A stretch of 63,357 nt of DNA, filler included, from Octopus bimaculoides (lineage: Eukaryota): NCBI RefSeq assembly GCF_001194135.2. It is 7 parts of 7 records of this genome, joined end to end, with 100 filler letters (N's around TTAATTAATTAA, not from the genome) between each part and the next. Parts side by side here need not be neighbours in the genome. Positions count along the whole stretch, not along the records: positions 55,809 to 60,708 come from NC_069010.1; 6 more parts are not named here. One strand, given 5' to 3'. Under the pieces are notes generated by a model. The model ran no database searches and had not been told where the DNA came from. It saw only the letters and a program-made list of their open reading frames with translations. The position numbers were made by a program, and so were the translations under genes. How positions within the stretch are numbered: position 1 is the stretch's first letter; the number at the start of each line of letters is the position of its first letter. Shown here piece by piece: positions 55,809-60,708 of this stretch.

Positions 55809-58300
55809 CGGTAGCCCGGCAAGAAATTCCTCGAGGACCACCCCACCATAAGGACCGCCATCACCTCCGAACAGCTGGGCGAAGTACTCCTGAAAGGCCT
55901 CACAAATTTTCTCGGGTTCGTTTACCATTTCGATTGGTCAAAGACACCATTTCGATTGGTCAAAGTCCGAATAGTGGAACTATTTCCTTGCCGAGCTTCC
56001 ACCACTCGGGCCCATCCAGCGGCCTTGATTCCTTCAATTCCCATCGCACGTAACTTACCTCTGGCAATACTTCCCATGTGTTGGGTTTCAAGATACTGGT
56101 TCAACTCCAATCTCTTTACCTTCACTTGGTCCGCATTACCAAACCTCAAAGCTTCTTCAAGTTCCTTATACCATCTCTTATTCTACGTCCCTTCTTAGCT
56201 AAACTTATGCTAAACTTAATAGACTCATATTTGAGGGCGTACCACCATTTATTATTATTGATGGTACCTGTCAATGTCTTCTATATTAACATCTTGATCT
56301 GCTTTCTGCATTCCTAAATCGCTAAAAGGGACGTATTGAGTTTCCAGTAGCCAGATCCCTGACTATGCAACTTATCTACCGTCAGTTTACAGGTAACCAT
56401 CTTGTGGTCACTGTAGCTGACTAGAAAAAACTGTGGACATTTAGCTATGGACTTATCTGTTTCTCTAATTAAAACCCTATTTATATATATTCTGGAAGAC
56501 CCGTCACTATTTGACCACGTCCACTGTGGAGTGTTCGGTTGTTCCAACCTATATGAATCTGCCAGTTGAAAGTGACTTAGTAGATCCCGAAAGTCAGGGT
56601 TATATTTTCTATTCATGTTCCAGCCAACACAGTCTGTGCGTGCATCACATATTGTGTTAAAGTCTCCTAACAATATTAGCGAATGCGACGTGGCCAGGAA
56701 CTTGGCCAGGTCACGAAAATATTCACTTTGCGGACCTATAAAATCGCAACCAGCCTGATTGTCTTGCCACAACTGAACGTTTGGTCGAGAACGACCAGCC
56801 TGCCTTCTAGATCAGAAAAAAAAAACTTTTTCTCGGTTACCCGGTTTCTCTTTACTTGGACCAAGACCCCGTCACCGCCACCCGCCCGTCTTGGAGAAAC
56901 GTATTTCTTGTAACCGNNNNNNNNNNNNNNNNNNNNNNNNNNNNNNNNNNNNNNNNNNNNNNNNNNNNNNNNNNNNNNNNNNNNNNNNNNNNNNNNNNNN
57001 NNNNNNNNNNNNNNNNNNNNNNNNNNNNNNNNNNNNNNNNNNNNNNNNNNNNNNNNNNNNNNNNNNNNNNNNNNNNNNNNNNNNNNNNNNNNNNNNNNNN
57101 NNNNNNNNNNNNNNNNNNNNNNNNNNNNNNNNNNNNNNNNNNNNNNNNNNNNNNNNNNNNNNNNNNNNNNNNNNNNNNNNNNNNNNNNNNNNNNNNNNNN
57201 NNNNNNNNNNNNNNNNNNNNNNNNNNNNNNNNNNNNNNNNNNNNNNNNNNNNNNNNNNNNNNNNNNNNNNNNNNNNNNNNNNNNNNNNNNNNNNNNNNNN
57301 NNNNNNNNNNNNNNNNNNNNNNNNNNNNNNNNNNNNNNNNNNNNNNNNNNNNNNNNNNNNNNNNNNNNNNNNNNNNNNNNNNNNNNNNNNNNNNNNNNNN
57401 NNNNNNNNNNNNNNNNNNNNNNNNNNNNNNNNNNNNNNNNNNNNNNNNNNNNNNNNNNNNNNNNNNNNNNNNNNNNNNNNNNNNNNNNNNNNNNNNNNNN
57501 NNNNNNNNNNNNNNNNNNNNNNNNNNNNNNNNNNNNNNNNNNNNNNNNNNNNNNNNNNNNNNNNNNNNNNNNNNNNNNNNNNNNNNNNNNNNNNNNNNNN
57601 NNNNNNNNNNNNNNNNNNNNNNNNNNNNNNNNNNNNNNNNNNNNNNNNNNNNNNNNNNNNNNNNNNNNNNNNNNNNNNNNNNNNNNNNNNNNNNNNNNNN
57701 NNNNNNNNNNNNNNNNNNNNNNNNNNNNNNNNNNNNNNNNNNNNNNNNNNNNNNNNNNNNNNNNNNNNNNNNNNNNNATGTCTTGAAAATAACAGTTTTC
57801 CTTTTTTCTGCCGTTAATTGTTCTGGTATTTCCACTTTTACCACTCCATCTTGTACCGTTATCTTTTCCTTGTATTTTAAGAATTCTTTTTTGTCAGTTG
57901 ACAGCTGTCGAGTTTCACTACCAGCTGTTGACGCAAAACTTTTTCTTTCTTCATTTTGAATGGCCTTTGCTCCTATATTTCTTTTAGCACCCGTAACTTT
58001 TGGTAATACAGGGAATTCACTTTCCGAAACATCAGAAATGTTATCCAAAATTAAACTTTCTATCTTCCTCGCTTCCTGCTCGGTCGATGAATCTTCACCC
58101 GACGAAGACACACTTTTCGGCATCTTGCGGCAATTAATGTTTTCCCCCTCAGGGGAAAACCACAAATAGCTTTCGAAAGAAAACTATGATACAATTTTTT
58201 AAACAATAGGTCTAACAATAGGCACAACAAGAGGTATAACGATATAACAATTAAAAGAAACTTACTTTACGAACACACTCCAACAATATATTTTCAATAA
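55809..58300 (-). mobile_element. Tx1/L1-like LINE 5' half: ORF1 + APE endonuclease, truncated by gaps
   Basis: EN 56314-56772 with LLGDFN, WTWSN, SRIY(I), YSDHKMV and GSGYWKLNTSLL; upstream ORF1-like MPKSVSSSGEDSS... from 58165. Confidence 0.9.
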
Positions 58301-58944
58301 CAGACAGACGAAATACTGCTCAGCATTTTGCCCGGCGTGCTAACATTTCTGCTAGCTTCCTGCCGCCTTAATATACTTAAATATTAATTTTACTGATATC
58401 AAGTATCAGTAGAAATTTATAGACGTTTGAAGCAAAAAAAAAAACAGTTTATCTTCTGTCTGATGGTCAAAAACATGATGTTTGTGTGTATGTAATCATC
58501 ATCCTCATCGCTCATCATCACTTGATTTCGGTTTTCTCTGCTGGCATGTGTTGGAGGGTTTGACGACAGCTAGCAAGCAGGACAACTACTCTAAATTCGA
58601 GTTTGATTTGGTTGGCTTTTACGGCTTCCTTACGTCGACCATTTTGCAGAATGTCACTAAGCATTTTCCCCGGTCGTTAATAATTGTTTCAAATTTGGGT
58701 ACAAGGCCAGCAATTTCAGGGACACGGCTATGTTCATTAAAACTACATGTTGTATCGATCCGGAAACGACGGAAAGCAGAGTGGATGCCTATGAAATTTG
58801 ATCTCAGAACGTAATGAAGTCCGAAACGCCACGACGCATTTTGTCCAGCCTGCTATCGATTCTACCATTATTTTGGCTTCCCGTGTGATAATACTCCGTT
58901 ATGATATTTAGCATATAATAATATTCTCTCATGATCTTTTCCAG

Positions 58945-59088
58945 TTGAACATGCTTCCTCAAGAAATATTACCACTGATTCTTTGCTTCTGTTTGCCTCC
59001 ATTGCTCTGTTCATTCTGGACATCATTGTTGGTTACTTTCTGTTCAAGAAATTGACAAGAAAAATGAGAACTCTTCAACGTCCAAATG
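58945..59088 (+). CDS. Candidate transmembrane exon 1 of a single-pass membrane protein (144 nt, phase 1-1)
   Basis: Acceptor gatcttttccAG, donor G|GTATTT; open frame EHASSRNITTDSLLLFASIALFILDIIVGYFLFKKLTRKMRTLQRPN = NxT sequon, 22-aa hydrophobic segment, basic stop-transfer. Confidence 0.78.
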
Positions 59089-59643
59089 GTATTTTAATTT
59101 TCTTCTTATATTTAAAGAATTTGTTTTAGATGCTTGACGCCCAATTGTTACTTACTTTGGGTATGAACGGTTGGTTTAAGTGTAAATTGGTTTCATATTT
59201 AGGCATAAAGCCAGCAAGTACACGGGCGAGGCTAAATCAATTACATCGATCTCCGTCCTCAGTTGGTACATATTTTATCGTTCCGAAAGAATAAAAGGTA
59301 AAGTTAACCTGGGTGGTGTAGTAGTCTGTAGCTAAATAGTTAAATGACTTTGCAAGAAGGTTTATTGAGTAATCTCCCTTTACGAAGTTTCTCGAAGCAT
59401 CTGTGTCATGAGAAGTAATTCTTAATTATTCAAGAAGCTTAGCATTTCTTTTGGAAGTTTCTAGAATGTCTAGCATTCCGTTAATAAAAACTGCTTACTA
59501 ACCCTGCTCTTCGCTTCTTAGTCGATTAGATTCAGAGCCATTCACGTCGTTACTATGTTCGTCTATTTCTCTACGCCACATGACTGAAAACCAGCACTTA
59601 GCTGTTATTTCTACATTTCCTGTTTCTGAACTTTCTTGCATAG

Positions 59644-59675
59644 ATTACTTCATTCAACTAGATTCGACATTTTGA
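59644..59675 (+). CDS. Candidate terminal exon for TM exon 1 (DYFIQLDSTF*)
   Basis: Acceptor tttcctgtttctgaactttcttgcatAG; phase-1 compatible; TGA 59673-59675; AATAAA 59695-59700. An alternative acceptor exists at 59521. Confidence 0.45.
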
Positions 59676-60169
59676 TTATGGTTCATCGTCGACCAATAAA
59701 TAGAACATATTTTTATATAGTAAATATATAATTCTTAAATTTATTCATTTTCCCTGTAAGAATTCTTTTAATAATATACACGCAGCCATATCAATACTTG
59801 CTATTGAACATATATTCCCACTACAGTGCTATTTCAAATTTGAACGTAAAGACTGACGAAATGCCTCTAAGAATTTTGTCGGGTGTGCTAACGATTGCAC
59901 CAGCTCACAGTCTTTCGAAATCTAAATATTGGTTTCAAGGTTCTGCAGAAGTTTAGCCATTTCGGGCAGGGGTTCAATCGATTGCATTCACCCCTGTTAT
60001 TCATTTTCTCTAACCATGGAATGTGATCTTAAAACGTAAACGTGGAGAAAATGCCGCTAAGCATTACGCCCAGCGCGCTGTCGATTCAACCAGTACATCG
60101 CTTTCCCATATAATACTAATTCATTATGATATTTAGCACTTTATGACACATTTTCTCAATCTTTTCCAG

Positions 60170-60310
60170 GTGAAGATGTTTCTCCAATAAATCTTACCAC
60201 TGAATTTGTCCTTCGGTTTGCATTTTGTGCTCTAATCTTTGCAATGAACACACCTGTTGCATTTGGTTGTAAGATGAGGAAAGAAACAAAAACTCTAAAA
60301 TGTGAGGATG
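60170..60310 (+). CDS. Candidate transmembrane exon 2, paralogue of exon 1 (141 nt, phase 1-1)
   Basis: Acceptor aatcttttccAG, donor G|GTGTTT (alternative in-frame donor TT|GTAAGA at 60268); EDVSPINLTTEFVLRFAFCALIFAMNTPVAFGCKMRKETKTLKCED; 27/34 nt identity to exon 1 at the 5' end. Confidence 0.68.
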
Positions 60311-60379
60311 GTGTTTTGATTTTATTCTTTTATTCTCTCAGCACATTGCCTTCTCATGTGACAATATCCCATTACGATA

Positions 60380-60708
60380 TGGAGGTCGGTGAGCTGGCAG
60401 AAGCGTTAGCACGCCGGGCGAAATGCTTAGCGGTATTTCGTCTGCCGTTACGTCCTGAGTTCAAATTCCGCCGAGGTCGTCTTTGCCTTTCATCCTTTCG
60501 AGGTCGATAAATGAAGTACTAGTTACGCAATGGGGTCGATGTAATCGACTTAGTCCCTTTGCCCATCTTTGTTTGTCCCCTCTATGTTTAGCCCCCTTGT
60601 GGACAATAAAGAAATAAGAAACGTTAGCACGCCGGGCGAAATGCTTAGCAATATTTCGTCTGCCATTACGTTCTGAGTTCAAATTCCGCCGTGGCCGACT
60701 TTGCCCTT
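60380..60708 (+). mobile_element. Two tandem SINE copies; the first carries a Tx1-like AATAAA tail
   Basis: Head gctggcagaagcgttagcacgccgggcgaaatgcttagc...gagttcaaattccgcc, repeated from 60620; tail ttgtcccctctatgtttagcccccttgtggacaataaagaaa. Confidence 0.92.

What the first reader, a model, noticed from the sequence alone, without database searches (positions are those of the whole stretch)
58945..60310. Tandem-duplicated transmembrane exons: a candidate switchable membrane-anchor system
Seen: two exons 1.2 kb apart share an identical 11-nt acceptor (atcttttccag), 27/34 nt at the 5' end, equivalent donors and symmetric phase 1-1. Both frames are open (47 and 46 codons, 14 identical residues) with NxT sequons (NIT/NLT) and basic stop-transfer. 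No ectodomain exon lies between them, so this is exon rather than gene duplication. TM1 contains an Asp; TM2 contains an Arg plus N-T-P. Established: Dscam uses mutually exclusive TM exons to change localisation, and vertebrate immunoreceptors assemble through opposite charges in TM helices. Inference: alternative anchors on one ectodomain, possibly differing in partner binding or trafficking. Retained frames with many amino-acid changes suggest relaxed or diversifying selection. The gene is unidentified.
Basis: partly seen in the sequence, partly recalled or inferred. Interest (0 to 1): 0.8.

Follow-up and report, generated by a model that had tools for sequence, protein, structure and literature searches.

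The report
Serial transmembrane exons, octopus membrane gene
The two look-alike exons are real, but they are most likely the first two of five or six duplicated exons that are spliced one after another to build a multi-pass membrane protein of an uncharacterised octopus gene family. They are probably not two alternative anchors for one protein.

Summary
Exon 1 (58945-59088) and exon 2 (60170-60310) lie 1225 nt apart. They share an 11-nt acceptor and similar donors, and both have open frames in phase 1-1.

A profile of the two peptides, searched against 1.84 billion proteins, hit only two Octopus bimaculoides genes, LOC106877375 and LOC106873011. Both are annotated as uncharacterised. In both gene models the counterparts of exon 1 and exon 2 are consecutive exons. 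Three or four further paralogous single-helix exons follow them.

Window exon 1 is closest to TM exon 1 of those genes (57% and 47% amino-acid identity). Exon 2 is closest to their TM exon 2 (64% and 42%). The two window exons are only 33% identical to each other. The duplication is therefore older than the gene family.

All 13 exons compared are open, have lengths divisible by three and carry the same splice-flank motifs. In both models, hydrophobicity, buried charges, cysteines and basic loops alternate between odd and even positions, as expected for an N-out multi-pass protein.

The repeated unit (about 0.6-0.7 kb at its shortest) carries an antisense SINE. This suggests growth by unequal crossing-over.

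I saw no transcript data, so alternative or combinatorial use of the exons is not excluded. I found nothing that supports it.

The parts
58945..59088 (+). TM exon 1 (144 nt, phase 1-1). It encodes a short acidic juxtamembrane stretch, a strongly hydrophobic helix (LLLFASIALFILDIIVGYF, containing an Asp) and the basic loop KKLTRKMRTLQRPN.
   Evidence: It is 57% identical to TM exon 1 of LOC106877375 and 47% to that of LOC106873011. tblastn E = 1.8e-11.
60170..60310 (+). TM exon 2 (141 nt, phase 1-1). It encodes NLTTE, a marginally hydrophobic helix with a conserved Arg and Pro (FVLRFAFCALIFAMNTPVA), and a loop containing Cys (GCKMRKETKTLKCED).
   Evidence: It is 64% and 42% identical to TM exon 2 of the two octopus genes, with dN/dS about 0.4. 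tblastn E = 3.6e-14.
58922..58944 (+). Conserved 3' splice region before exon 1 (tattctctcatgatcttttccag): a candidate branch point (ctcAt), a pyrimidine tract and the AG.
   Evidence: The same motif, 'tttcatgatcttttccag', precedes all 13 family exons. Mean pairwise identity of the last 20 intron bases is 0.85, against 0.56 for unrelated sequence.
60147..60169 (+). Conserved 3' splice region before exon 2 (cacattttctcaatcttttccag).
59089..59106 (+). Donor and conserved downstream intron of exon 1 (gtattttaattttcttct).
   Evidence: The family consensus is 'G|gtattttgattttattc'. Mean pairwise identity is 0.75.
60311..60328 (+). Donor and conserved downstream intron of exon 2 (gtgttttgattttattct).
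58744..58867 (-). Old antisense tRNA-derived SINE copy inside repeat unit 1. Its head ends about 70-78 nt before the exon-1 acceptor.
   Evidence: blastn against the intact SINE at 60380-60620: SINE positions 16-139, 67% identity, E = 9e-14.
60018..60100 (-). Old antisense SINE head inside repeat unit 2. It ends 70 nt before the exon-2 acceptor, the same offset as in unit 1.
   Evidence: The same offset (50-71 nt) is found in 9 of 13 family units.
58791..59112 (+). Repeat unit copy 1 as found by blastn: part of the SINE, the proximal intron, exon 1 and 24 nt of the next intron.
   Evidence: 68% identical to 60016-60334 over 328 columns, E = 6e-41. MAFFT extends the homology to about -260.
60016..60334 (+). 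Repeat unit copy 2.
   Evidence: It is also 73% identical to L001 31194-31677, the TM exon 2 unit of LOC106877375.
59232..59316 (-). 3' part (positions 89-174) of an antisense SINE in the exon1-exon2 intron. Together with 59831-59908 it forms one SINE split by an insertion.
59831..59908 (-). Head part (positions 10-87) of that split antisense SINE.

Best explanation
The two exons are TM exon 1 and TM exon 2 of a member of a small, uncharacterised octopus gene family. This member matches no protein in the collection searched. The annotated members are O. bimaculoides LOC106877375 and LOC106873011.

In this family one exon of about 111-144 nt, in phase 1-1, encodes one membrane helix with its flanking loop. 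That exon has been duplicated in tandem five to seven times. In the annotated members the copies are spliced consecutively. The product has a Cys- and sequon-rich N-terminal ectodomain, five or six helices and a basic tail.

Inferred roles of the two window exons:
- Exon 1 supplies helix 1, running outside to inside. It is strongly hydrophobic and is followed by a loop with six basic residues.
- Exon 2 supplies helix 2, running inside to outside. It is marginally hydrophobic, has a conserved Arg and Pro, and is followed by an exoplasmic loop containing Cys.
- The junction codon G|GT reads Gly.
- The Asp of helix 1 and the Arg of helix 2 most likely neutralise each other, or the conserved Glu of helix 4, inside the bundle.

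Inferred origin: the array grew by unequal crossing-over of a unit (about 0.6-0.7 kb at its shortest) that carries an antisense SINE next to the exon.

What is shown and what is inferred:
- Shown: homology, exon structure, serial arrangement in the gene models, conservation of frame and splice flanks.
- Inferred: actual splicing of the window copy, membrane topology, charge pairing, the recombination mechanism.
- Unknown: the biochemical function of the family.
For: - The profile search hit only two proteins at E <= 0.001: P0002 (E = 5e-23, three matched stretches) and P0003. Both are O. bimaculoides proteins annotated as uncharacterised.
- Exon maps rebuilt on L001 and L002 reproduce both proteins exactly. 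The exon-1-like and exon-2-like exons are adjacent, and every TM exon is in phase 1-1.
- Homology is specific to position in the array. W_E1 versus A_E1 is 57% and versus B_E1 47%. W_E2 versus A_E2 is 64% and versus B_E2 42%. W_E1 versus W_E2 is 33%.
- Homology extends into the introns, at 73-75% nucleotide identity to L001.
- All 13 exons have lengths divisible by three (nine distinct lengths), are open and have AG/GT.
- Odd helices have negative approximate insertion energies (-0.45 to -4.7). Even helices have positive ones (+0.9 to +4.7) and carry Arg, Glu or Asp.
- Cysteines occur only in the N-terminal domain and loops 2 and 4, never in loops 1, 3 and 5. Loops 1 and 5 and the tail of LOC106877375 are strongly basic.
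- An antisense SINE sits at the same offset in 9 of 13 units, and all 26 SINE hits in the two loci are antisense.
- The unit occurs only inside the arrays of the two loci, not in their flanks.
Against: - The gene models are predictions and I saw no transcript evidence. Any gene predictor would chain exons that are all in phase 1-1 and divisible by three.
- The exons have three features that, from my own knowledge, are typical of regulated cassette exons: symmetry, conserved flanking intron, and a conserved weak donor (GTATTT, where the non-TM exons of the same genes have GTAAGT or GTAATT).
- Each copy keeps the polarity acidic flank, helix, basic flank. For even helices this places four basic residues in loops predicted to lie outside.
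- The N[LF]TTE motif before helix 2 is conserved in all three genes although it is predicted to be cytosolic.
- The models have no signal peptide ahead of an N-terminal domain of 85-165 residues, so they may be incomplete.
- dN/dS for exon 1 is 0.8-1.0.
- The window copy matches no protein in the collection. Its other exons lie outside the piece, so it could be a dead paralogue.
Confidence: 0.7

Rival explanations
1. Alternative use of the array. This covers mutually exclusive choice of one TM exon and combinatorial skipping of cassette exons. Either would give isoforms with different anchors, helix numbers or tail orientation.
For: - Every TM exon is in phase 1-1 and divisible by three.
- The preceding ectodomain exon ends in phase 1 and the last exon starts in phase 1, so any subset is in frame. 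All five single-exon versions of gene A translate without a stop.
- Splice-proximal intron sequence is more conserved than the exons: 0.85 and 0.75 against 0.66.
- The donors are weak and conserved (GTATTT).
- NCBI lists several isoforms of LOC106877375.
Against: - The two isoforms I could read (X1, X3) differ only at the 5' end and contain all five TM exons.
- The LOC106873011 protein carries two NCBI accessions and a UniProt accession with the same sequence, and it contains all six TM exons.
- No docking/selector pairing stands out from shuffled controls.
- Even-numbered exons encode helices with positive approximate insertion energies and buried charges, so they are poor sole anchors.
- The odd/even alternation of Cys and charge has no reason to exist if only one exon is used at a time.
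Confidence: 0.13
2. The window copy is a non-functional or unexpressed paralogue. The exons are relics whose frames happen still to be open, and exon 2 in particular is decaying.
For: - Neither peptide shares words with any protein in a collection of 5.8 billion clusters.
- Within the window, exon 1 versus exon 2 gives dN/dS of about 0.95 with differences spread evenly over codon positions.
- Exon 2's hydrophobicity is no higher than expected for a neutral descendant of exon 1 (31% of simulations reach it), and a neutral copy keeps its frame 17% of the time.
- A dead unit of this kind exists in L002: an open frame with the donor mutated from GT to CT.
- A LINE and further insertions sit in the neighbouring introns.
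Against: - Both window exons keep the AG, the GT, the frame and the position-specific motifs shared with their counterparts (VLRF, P-V, GC-MRKE, LKCED; FLFKK, RKMR).
- For exon 2, dN/dS against its counterparts is about 0.4.
- The absence of a protein match says little. A control search with the LINE ORF of the same piece also found almost nothing, so this locus may simply not be represented in the collection.
Confidence: 0.15
3. The peptides are chance open frames in transposable-element sequence: a dispersed repeat family, not a gene.
For: The units contain SINE sequence, and the piece is dense with SINE and LINE fragments.
Against: - The SINE part ends about 70 nt before each exon, and the exon itself has no SINE similarity.
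- The unit is found only inside the TM-exon arrays of two annotated genes, not in their flanks or long introns.
- All 13 copies are open, divisible by three and flanked by AG/GT.
Confidence: 0.02

Closest known systems
Octopus bimaculoides LOC106877375 (XP_014781750.1 / XP_052834142.1) and LOC106873011 (XP_014775695.1, UniProt A0A0L8H3I4), both annotated 'uncharacterized protein'
   Same: Exon-1-type and exon-2-type exons share position-specific motifs (57-64% and 42-47% identity). Phase, acceptor and donor motifs are identical. Intron homology reaches 73-75%. The antisense SINE lies at the same offset.
   Different: The window copy is a distinct gene, since identity is far below 100%. It matches no protein in the collection. 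Its exon1-exon2 intron is longer (1081 nt, with an insertion of about 527 nt). Only two of its exons are visible.
Drosophila Dscam1 exon 17 cluster (two alternative transmembrane exons, mutually exclusive; PMC1397879 for the exon-17 array)
   Same: Tandemly duplicated exons that each encode a transmembrane segment, with equal phases.
   Different: In this family five or six copies are chained in series in the gene models. Including several keeps the frame. No RNA pairing was detected. Even copies are poor stand-alone anchors. There is no sequence relationship.
[quoted passage not shown]
   Same: The overall layout of LOC106877375: a Cys- and sequon-rich beta-strand ectodomain, five helices and a short tail. 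From my own recollection, the CD47 gene also has roughly one exon per helix.
   Different: There is no sequence similarity: no CD47 chain appears even at E <= 10. An Ig fold is not established, because the AF2 model has pLDDT 41. LOC106873011 has six helices. The CD47 helices are not known to me as recent duplicates of one exon.
Tandem exon duplication by unequal crossing-over between flanking SINEs (Alu-mediated exon duplications in human genes; own knowledge), and tandem duplicated exons in general (PMC9741552)
   Same: Head-to-tail units that each carry a SINE in the same orientation beside the exon. The duplicated exons are symmetric.
   Different: Here the process was repeated until it built most of a multi-pass membrane domain, and the copies are constitutive in the gene models. 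The recombination breakpoints are too old to be seen.

Membership tests
LOC106877375 / LOC106873011 family (octopus, uncharacterised) | An exon-1-type and an exon-2-type TM exon, adjacent and in that order, with position-specific motifs | tested here: met
   W_E1 is closest to A_E1 and B_E1, and W_E2 is closest to A_E2 and B_E2.
LOC106877375 / LOC106873011 family (octopus, uncharacterised) | Phase 1-1, length divisible by three, and the shared flanks 'tttcatgatcttttccag|GTGAAGA' and 'G|gtattttgattttattc' | tested here: met
LOC106877375 / LOC106873011 family (octopus, uncharacterised) | An upstream Cys-rich ectodomain exon ending in phase 1, and downstream TM exons 3-5 plus a tail exon | not testable with these tools
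   None is present in the piece. In the homologues these exons lie 1.7 kb or more upstream and 0.6 kb or more downstream, which is beyond the piece's ends or behind the LINE and the N gap.
Mutually exclusive exon cluster (Dscam exon 17 type) | Tandem homologous exons of like length and equal phase | tested here: met
Mutually exclusive exon cluster (Dscam exon 17 type) | Exactly one member of the cluster in each mature transcript | tested here: not met
   This was tested only on annotated gene models. X1 and X3 of LOC106877375 and the LOC106873011 model contain all members in series. No RNA reads were available.
Mutually exclusive exon cluster (Dscam exon 17 type) | A mechanism that enforces exclusivity: a frame shift on double inclusion, an intron too short to splice, or competing docking/selector RNA pairing | tested here: not met
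   Double inclusion stays in frame. The introns are 0.46-1.9 kb. Best duplexes between candidate docking introns and the conserved upstream elements are no better than with shuffled elements and do not share a site. Much of the downstream intron is N, so the pairing test is incomplete.
Mutually exclusive exon cluster (Dscam exon 17 type) | Each alternative can replace the others functionally (here, as a stand-alone anchor) | tested here: not met
   Even-numbered helices have positive approximate insertion energies (+0.9 to +4.7 kcal/mol; window exon 2 +4.0) and buried Arg, Glu or Asp. The energy scale values were entered from memory.
CD47-like proteins (IgV ectodomain + 5 TM) | Sequence or fold similarity to CD47 | tested here: not met
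   phmmer of P0004 against all PDB chains gave no CD47 chain at E <= 10. The only hit is a Fab heavy chain at E = 0.31. There is no Pfam family. The AF2 model is unusable, so the fold was not compared.
SINE-mediated unequal crossing-over (tandem exon duplication) | Same-orientation repeats bounding each duplicated unit | tested here: met
   An antisense SINE head lies 50-71 nt upstream of the acceptor in 9 of 13 units. All 26 SINE hits in L001 and L002 have the same orientation.
SINE-mediated unequal crossing-over (tandem exon duplication) | Recombination breakpoints inside the repeats (hybrid SINEs) | tested here: inconclusive
   The blastn boundary of the window's two units falls inside the SINE part (58791 / 60016). 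The copies are only about 67-70% identical, so no hybrid junction can be recognised.

The most novel reading that the evidence does not exclude
The array is a splicing 'construction kit'. Every TM exon is in phase 1-1 and is flanked by conserved, weak splice sites. Octopus cells could therefore include different subsets, producing proteins with one to six helices on the same ectodomain. Odd and even helix numbers would place the basic tail on opposite sides of the membrane. This would amount to combinatorial control of membrane topology by cassette exons.
Probability: 0.1. Interest if true: 0.75.

Novelty: new member of a known kind. Interest (0 to 1): 0.35.

Why it matters
It replaces an attractive reading with a plainer one. 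What looked like a Dscam-like switch of membrane anchors is best explained as two neighbouring helices of one multi-pass protein.

The family itself has some interest. Most of its membrane domain was assembled by repeated duplication of a single one-helix exon, recently enough that the introns, an embedded SINE and the splice signals are still recognisably homologous. This offers a view of how a helix that inserts outside-to-inside adapts after duplication to the opposite orientation. The changes seen are loss of hydrophobicity, gain of buried charges, and Cys in alternate loops.

The work also flags a paralogue that matches no protein in the collection searched, and a family with no Pfam domain, no solved structure and no paper found for its identifiers.

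Tried and rejected
- Word-indexed protein searches with each peptide found nothing. A control with the LINE ORF of the same piece gave one weak ENA hit.
- Comparing only the two window exons suggested that exon 2 is a neutrally decaying pseudo-exon: dN/dS about 0.95, even spread of differences over codon positions, and hydrophobicity no better than simulated decay. I dropped this after the true counterparts were found. It survives only as a minor rival.
- tRNA and Rfam scans of the piece gave no tRNA and only sub-threshold snoRNA-like hits.
- Pfam, the PDB sequence search and a paper search for the gene and protein identifiers returned nothing usable.
- The AlphaFold2 model of LOC106877375, built with a two-sequence alignment, had mean pLDDT 41 and pTM 0.25. 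I did not use it and did not run a fold search on it, so the CD47 resemblance remains a lead from memory.
- A docking/selector RNA pairing search in gene A gave no signal above shuffled controls.
- A metagenome scan with the conserved acceptor pattern gave three chance hits with no homology beyond the pattern.
- The look-up of encoding contigs with isoform X3 returned nothing on record. The same tool worked with X1 and with P0003.
- The TE-family explanation is rejected.
Full report
**1. The observation**

The piece (55809-60708) is AT-rich, with 33-45% G+C. The motif 'atcttttccag' ends at 58944 and at 60169.

- Exon 1 is 58945-59088 (144 nt) and exon 2 is 60170-60310 (141 nt), 1225 nt apart start to start.
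- The donors are 'ATG|gtattttaatttt' and 'ATG|gtgttttgatttt'.
- Only the frame that begins at the third exon base is open in both exons. It gives EHASSRNITTDSLLLFASIALFILDIIVGYFLFKKLTRKMRTLQRPN and EDVSPINLTTEFVLRFAFCALIFAMNTPVAFGCKMRKETKTLKCED, with 14 identical residues and one in-frame 3-nt indel.
- No other coding-looking segment lies between the exons.

**2. What the window alone says**

The similarity is wider than the exons.

- It runs over 58791-59112 versus 60016-60334 at 68% identity. Weaker similarity reaches about 260 nt upstream.
- The upstream part is an old antisense copy of a tRNA-derived SINE. An intact sense copy of that SINE lies at 60380-60620, and other fragments are at 58298-58357, 59232-59316, 59831-59908 and 60617-60708.
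- Identity by segment: SINE part 70%, proximal intron 80%, exon 68%, first 25 nt after the donor 80%.
- Between the two exons dN/dS is about 0.95, and the differences fall evenly on the three codon positions (18/20/16).
- A neutral copy would keep the frame about 17% of the time. A random 141-nt frame in this piece is open 6-10% of the time.
- Peptide 1 is a strong membrane helix: Kyte-Doolittle 19-residue mean 2.48, approximate insertion energy -0.45 kcal/mol.
- Peptide 2 is marginal (1.74 and +4.0). It is no more hydrophobic than 31% of simulated neutral descendants of exon 1.

From the window alone, exon 2 could pass for a decaying duplicate.

**3. External evidence changes the picture**

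Word-indexed searches with each peptide found nothing. A control with the LINE endonuclease ORF of the same piece also found almost nothing, so those negatives are weak.

A profile of the two peptides (A2) was scored against 1.84 billion representative proteins. It found two proteins at E <= 0.001:
- P0002, E = 5e-23, three matched stretches.
- P0003, E = 2e-4, two matched stretches.

They are XP_052834142.1 (LOC106877375 isoform X3; isoform X1 is P0004, 411 aa) and XP_014775695.1 (LOC106873011, UniProt A0A0L8H3I4). Both are Octopus bimaculoides proteins, both are annotated 'uncharacterized protein', and both map to CM046630.1.

Their loci were fetched as L001 and L002. I rebuilt the exon maps, and the spliced products equal the deposited proteins exactly.

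**4. Anatomy of the family**

LOC106877375 (gene A) has three 5' exons, five TM exons and a tail exon.
- The third 5' exon is Cys-rich and ends in phase 1 with a GTAAGT donor.
- The TM exons in L001 are 30835-30978, 31516-31650, 32827-32952, 34333-34449 and 34926-35054.

LOC106873011 (gene B) has six TM exons in L002: 42399-42542, 43194-43331, 44293-44424, 46286-46402, 46959-47069 and 47963-48097.

Features shared by the TM exons:
- Every one is in phase 1-1 and divisible by three (111-144 nt).
- Each encodes one helix with its loop.
- Each is framed by the same motifs, 'tttcatgatcttttccag|GTGAAGA' and 'G|gtattttgattttattc'.

Position of the window exons in this family:
- Window exon 1 is closest to TM exon 1 of genes A and B (57% and 47%).
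- Window exon 2 is closest to their TM exon 2 (64% and 42%).
- The two window exons are 33% identical to each other.
- Intron homology to gene A is 73-75%: 58479-59303 with L001 30367-31180, and 59831-60334 with L001 31194-31677.

The exon 1 / exon 2 duplication therefore predates the divergence of the three genes. The window holds a third member of the family.

Exon 2's peculiar residues are conserved in its counterparts: Arg in 'VLRF', Pro, 'GC.MRKE' and 'LKCE'. Its dN/dS against them is about 0.4. Exon 1 is less constrained, at 0.8-1.0.

Nine distinct exon lengths, all divisible by three, imply several independent in-frame indels. That would be very unlikely without selection on the reading frame (my inference).

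**5. Serial or alternative use**

In the gene models the exons are consecutive. Four observations speak for serial use.

- (a) Both readable isoforms of gene A contain all five TM exons and differ only at the 5' end. The gene B product carries NCBI and UniProt accessions with the identical sequence.
- (b) There is an odd/even alternation in both genes.
  - Helices 1, 3 and 5 have negative approximate insertion energies.
  - Helices 2, 4 and 6 have positive ones and carry Arg (helix 2), Glu (helix 4) or Asp/Arg/Glu (helix 6).
  - Cysteines occur in the N-terminal domain and loops 2 and 4 but never in loops 1, 3 and 5.
  - Loop 1 (7-9 basic residues), loop 5 and the tail of gene A are basic.
  - This is the pattern of an N-out multi-pass chain. 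It has no reason to exist if a single exon is chosen.
- (c) Nothing enforces exclusivity. Joint inclusion stays in frame, the introns are 0.46-1.9 kb, and RNA duplexes between candidate docking introns and the conserved upstream elements are no better than with shuffled elements.
- (d) Even-numbered exons would be poor sole anchors.

Points against serial use:
- The models are predictions, and I saw no reads.
- Any predictor would chain symmetric exons.
- The TM exons share a weak conserved donor (GTATTT), whereas the non-TM exons of the same genes have GTAAGT or GTAATT.
- Their splice-proximal intron is more conserved than the exons: mean pairwise identity 0.85 and 0.75 against 0.66, with an unrelated baseline of 0.56-0.62.
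- All single-exon subsets are in frame.

From my own knowledge, the donor, flank and symmetry features are classic traits of regulated cassette exons. I put serial use at about 0.7 and some form of alternative use at about 0.13.

**6. Origin**

- Start-to-start spacing of units ranges from 593 to 1993 nt. The shortest spacings are about 0.6-0.7 kb.
- An antisense SINE head ends 50-71 nt before the acceptor in 9 of 13 units. Many units carry a second antisense SINE at about -230 to -270. All 26 SINE hits in the two loci are antisense.
- The sequence after each donor runs into the next unit's SINE.
- The unit occurs only inside the arrays.

This fits repeated unequal crossing-over of a SINE-plus-exon unit. 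The breakpoints are too old to be seen, so this is inference.

**7. Identity of the protein**

- There is no Pfam family.
- There is no PDB relative by sequence. The only hit is a Fab heavy chain at E = 0.31.
- No paper was found for the identifiers.
- The AF2 model is unusable, with pLDDT 41.

[quoted passage not shown] No sequence similarity supports membership.

The piece most likely comes from an octopod genome. The basis is the closest homologues, the shared SINE, and intron-level similarity to O. bimaculoides. The species was not determined.

**8. Verdict**

- The thing itself is another member, without a protein match in the collection searched, of a predicted but uncharacterised octopus family whose membrane domain was built by serial exon duplication.
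- It is of moderate interest for membrane-protein evolution. Interest would be higher only if transcripts show combinatorial use of the exons.

Noticed in passing
L002 45386-45524 (between TM exons 3 and 4 of LOC106873011): There is a seventh TM-exon unit that is not in the gene model. It has the intact acceptor 'gcttttccag|GTGAAGAT' and an open 46-codon frame (EDSLPSICTIWIVIAFLSIAPSIAWATAAYCLLKMTIQMITQKWKN, exon-3-like). Its donor has mutated from GT to CT. It is probably a recently dead pseudo-exon.
   Followed up: partly
L001 32821 / 32827: In TM exon 3 of LOC106877375 the annotated acceptor lies 6 nt downstream of the family's conserved 'ccag' ('ccaggtgaag|AT'). The conserved site would also stay in frame and would add Gly-Glu. 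This may be a tandem alternative acceptor.
   Followed up: partly
window 55809-58165, minus strand (N gap 56918-57777): A LINE-like retroelement lies antisense to the gene. One ORF (56314-56772) matches the Exo_endo_phos family (PF03372, E = 9e-7). An ORF start (MPKSVSSSGEDSS...) is at 58123. The element is interrupted by an assembly gap of 860 N. Its only protein relative in the collection is a 34%-identical ENA fragment.
   Followed up: partly
window 59304-59830: A segment of about 527 nt is absent from the corresponding intron of LOC106877375. It splits an antisense SINE into 59232-59316 and 59831-59908. It is presumably a later insertion, and its nature was not identified.
   Followed up: no
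window 60380-60708: Two sense-strand copies of the same tRNA-derived SINE lie head to tail: 60380-60620 complete, and 60617-60708 cut by the end of the piece, 90% identical. They are much younger than the antisense copies inside the exon units. ARAGORN does not call them tRNAs.
   Followed up: partly
L001 31651-31760, 32953-33060; L002 43332-43440, 44425-44530: The introns after TM exons 2 and 3 of both annotated genes carry a different repeat ('...gtttcagtcatttgactgcggccatgctggagcacc...') about 40 nt after the donor. This insertion therefore predates the gene duplication and groups exons 2 and 3 together. The window's exon 2 lacks it and has a sense SINE instead.
   Followed up: no
P0004 / P0003 N-termini (L001 10001-10199; L002 10001-10051): Neither gene model begins with a recognisable signal peptide, although the N-terminal 85-165 residues carry 3-5 N-x-S/T sequons and 4-7 cysteines. 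The models may lack a 5' exon.
   Followed up: no
window 58891-58907 and 60117-60133, and about -55 to -40 of all family units: A second conserved intronic block, 'ccattatgatatttagca', is nearly invariant in 11-13 of 13 units. It lies upstream of an AG, so it is unlikely to be the branch site. Its function is unknown; it may be a splicing regulatory element.
   Followed up: partly
window 58430-58513, minus strand: A weak C/D-box snoRNA-like Rfam hit (ceN89, 24.7 bits against a gathering score of 48, E = 0.033). Probably chance.
   Followed up: no
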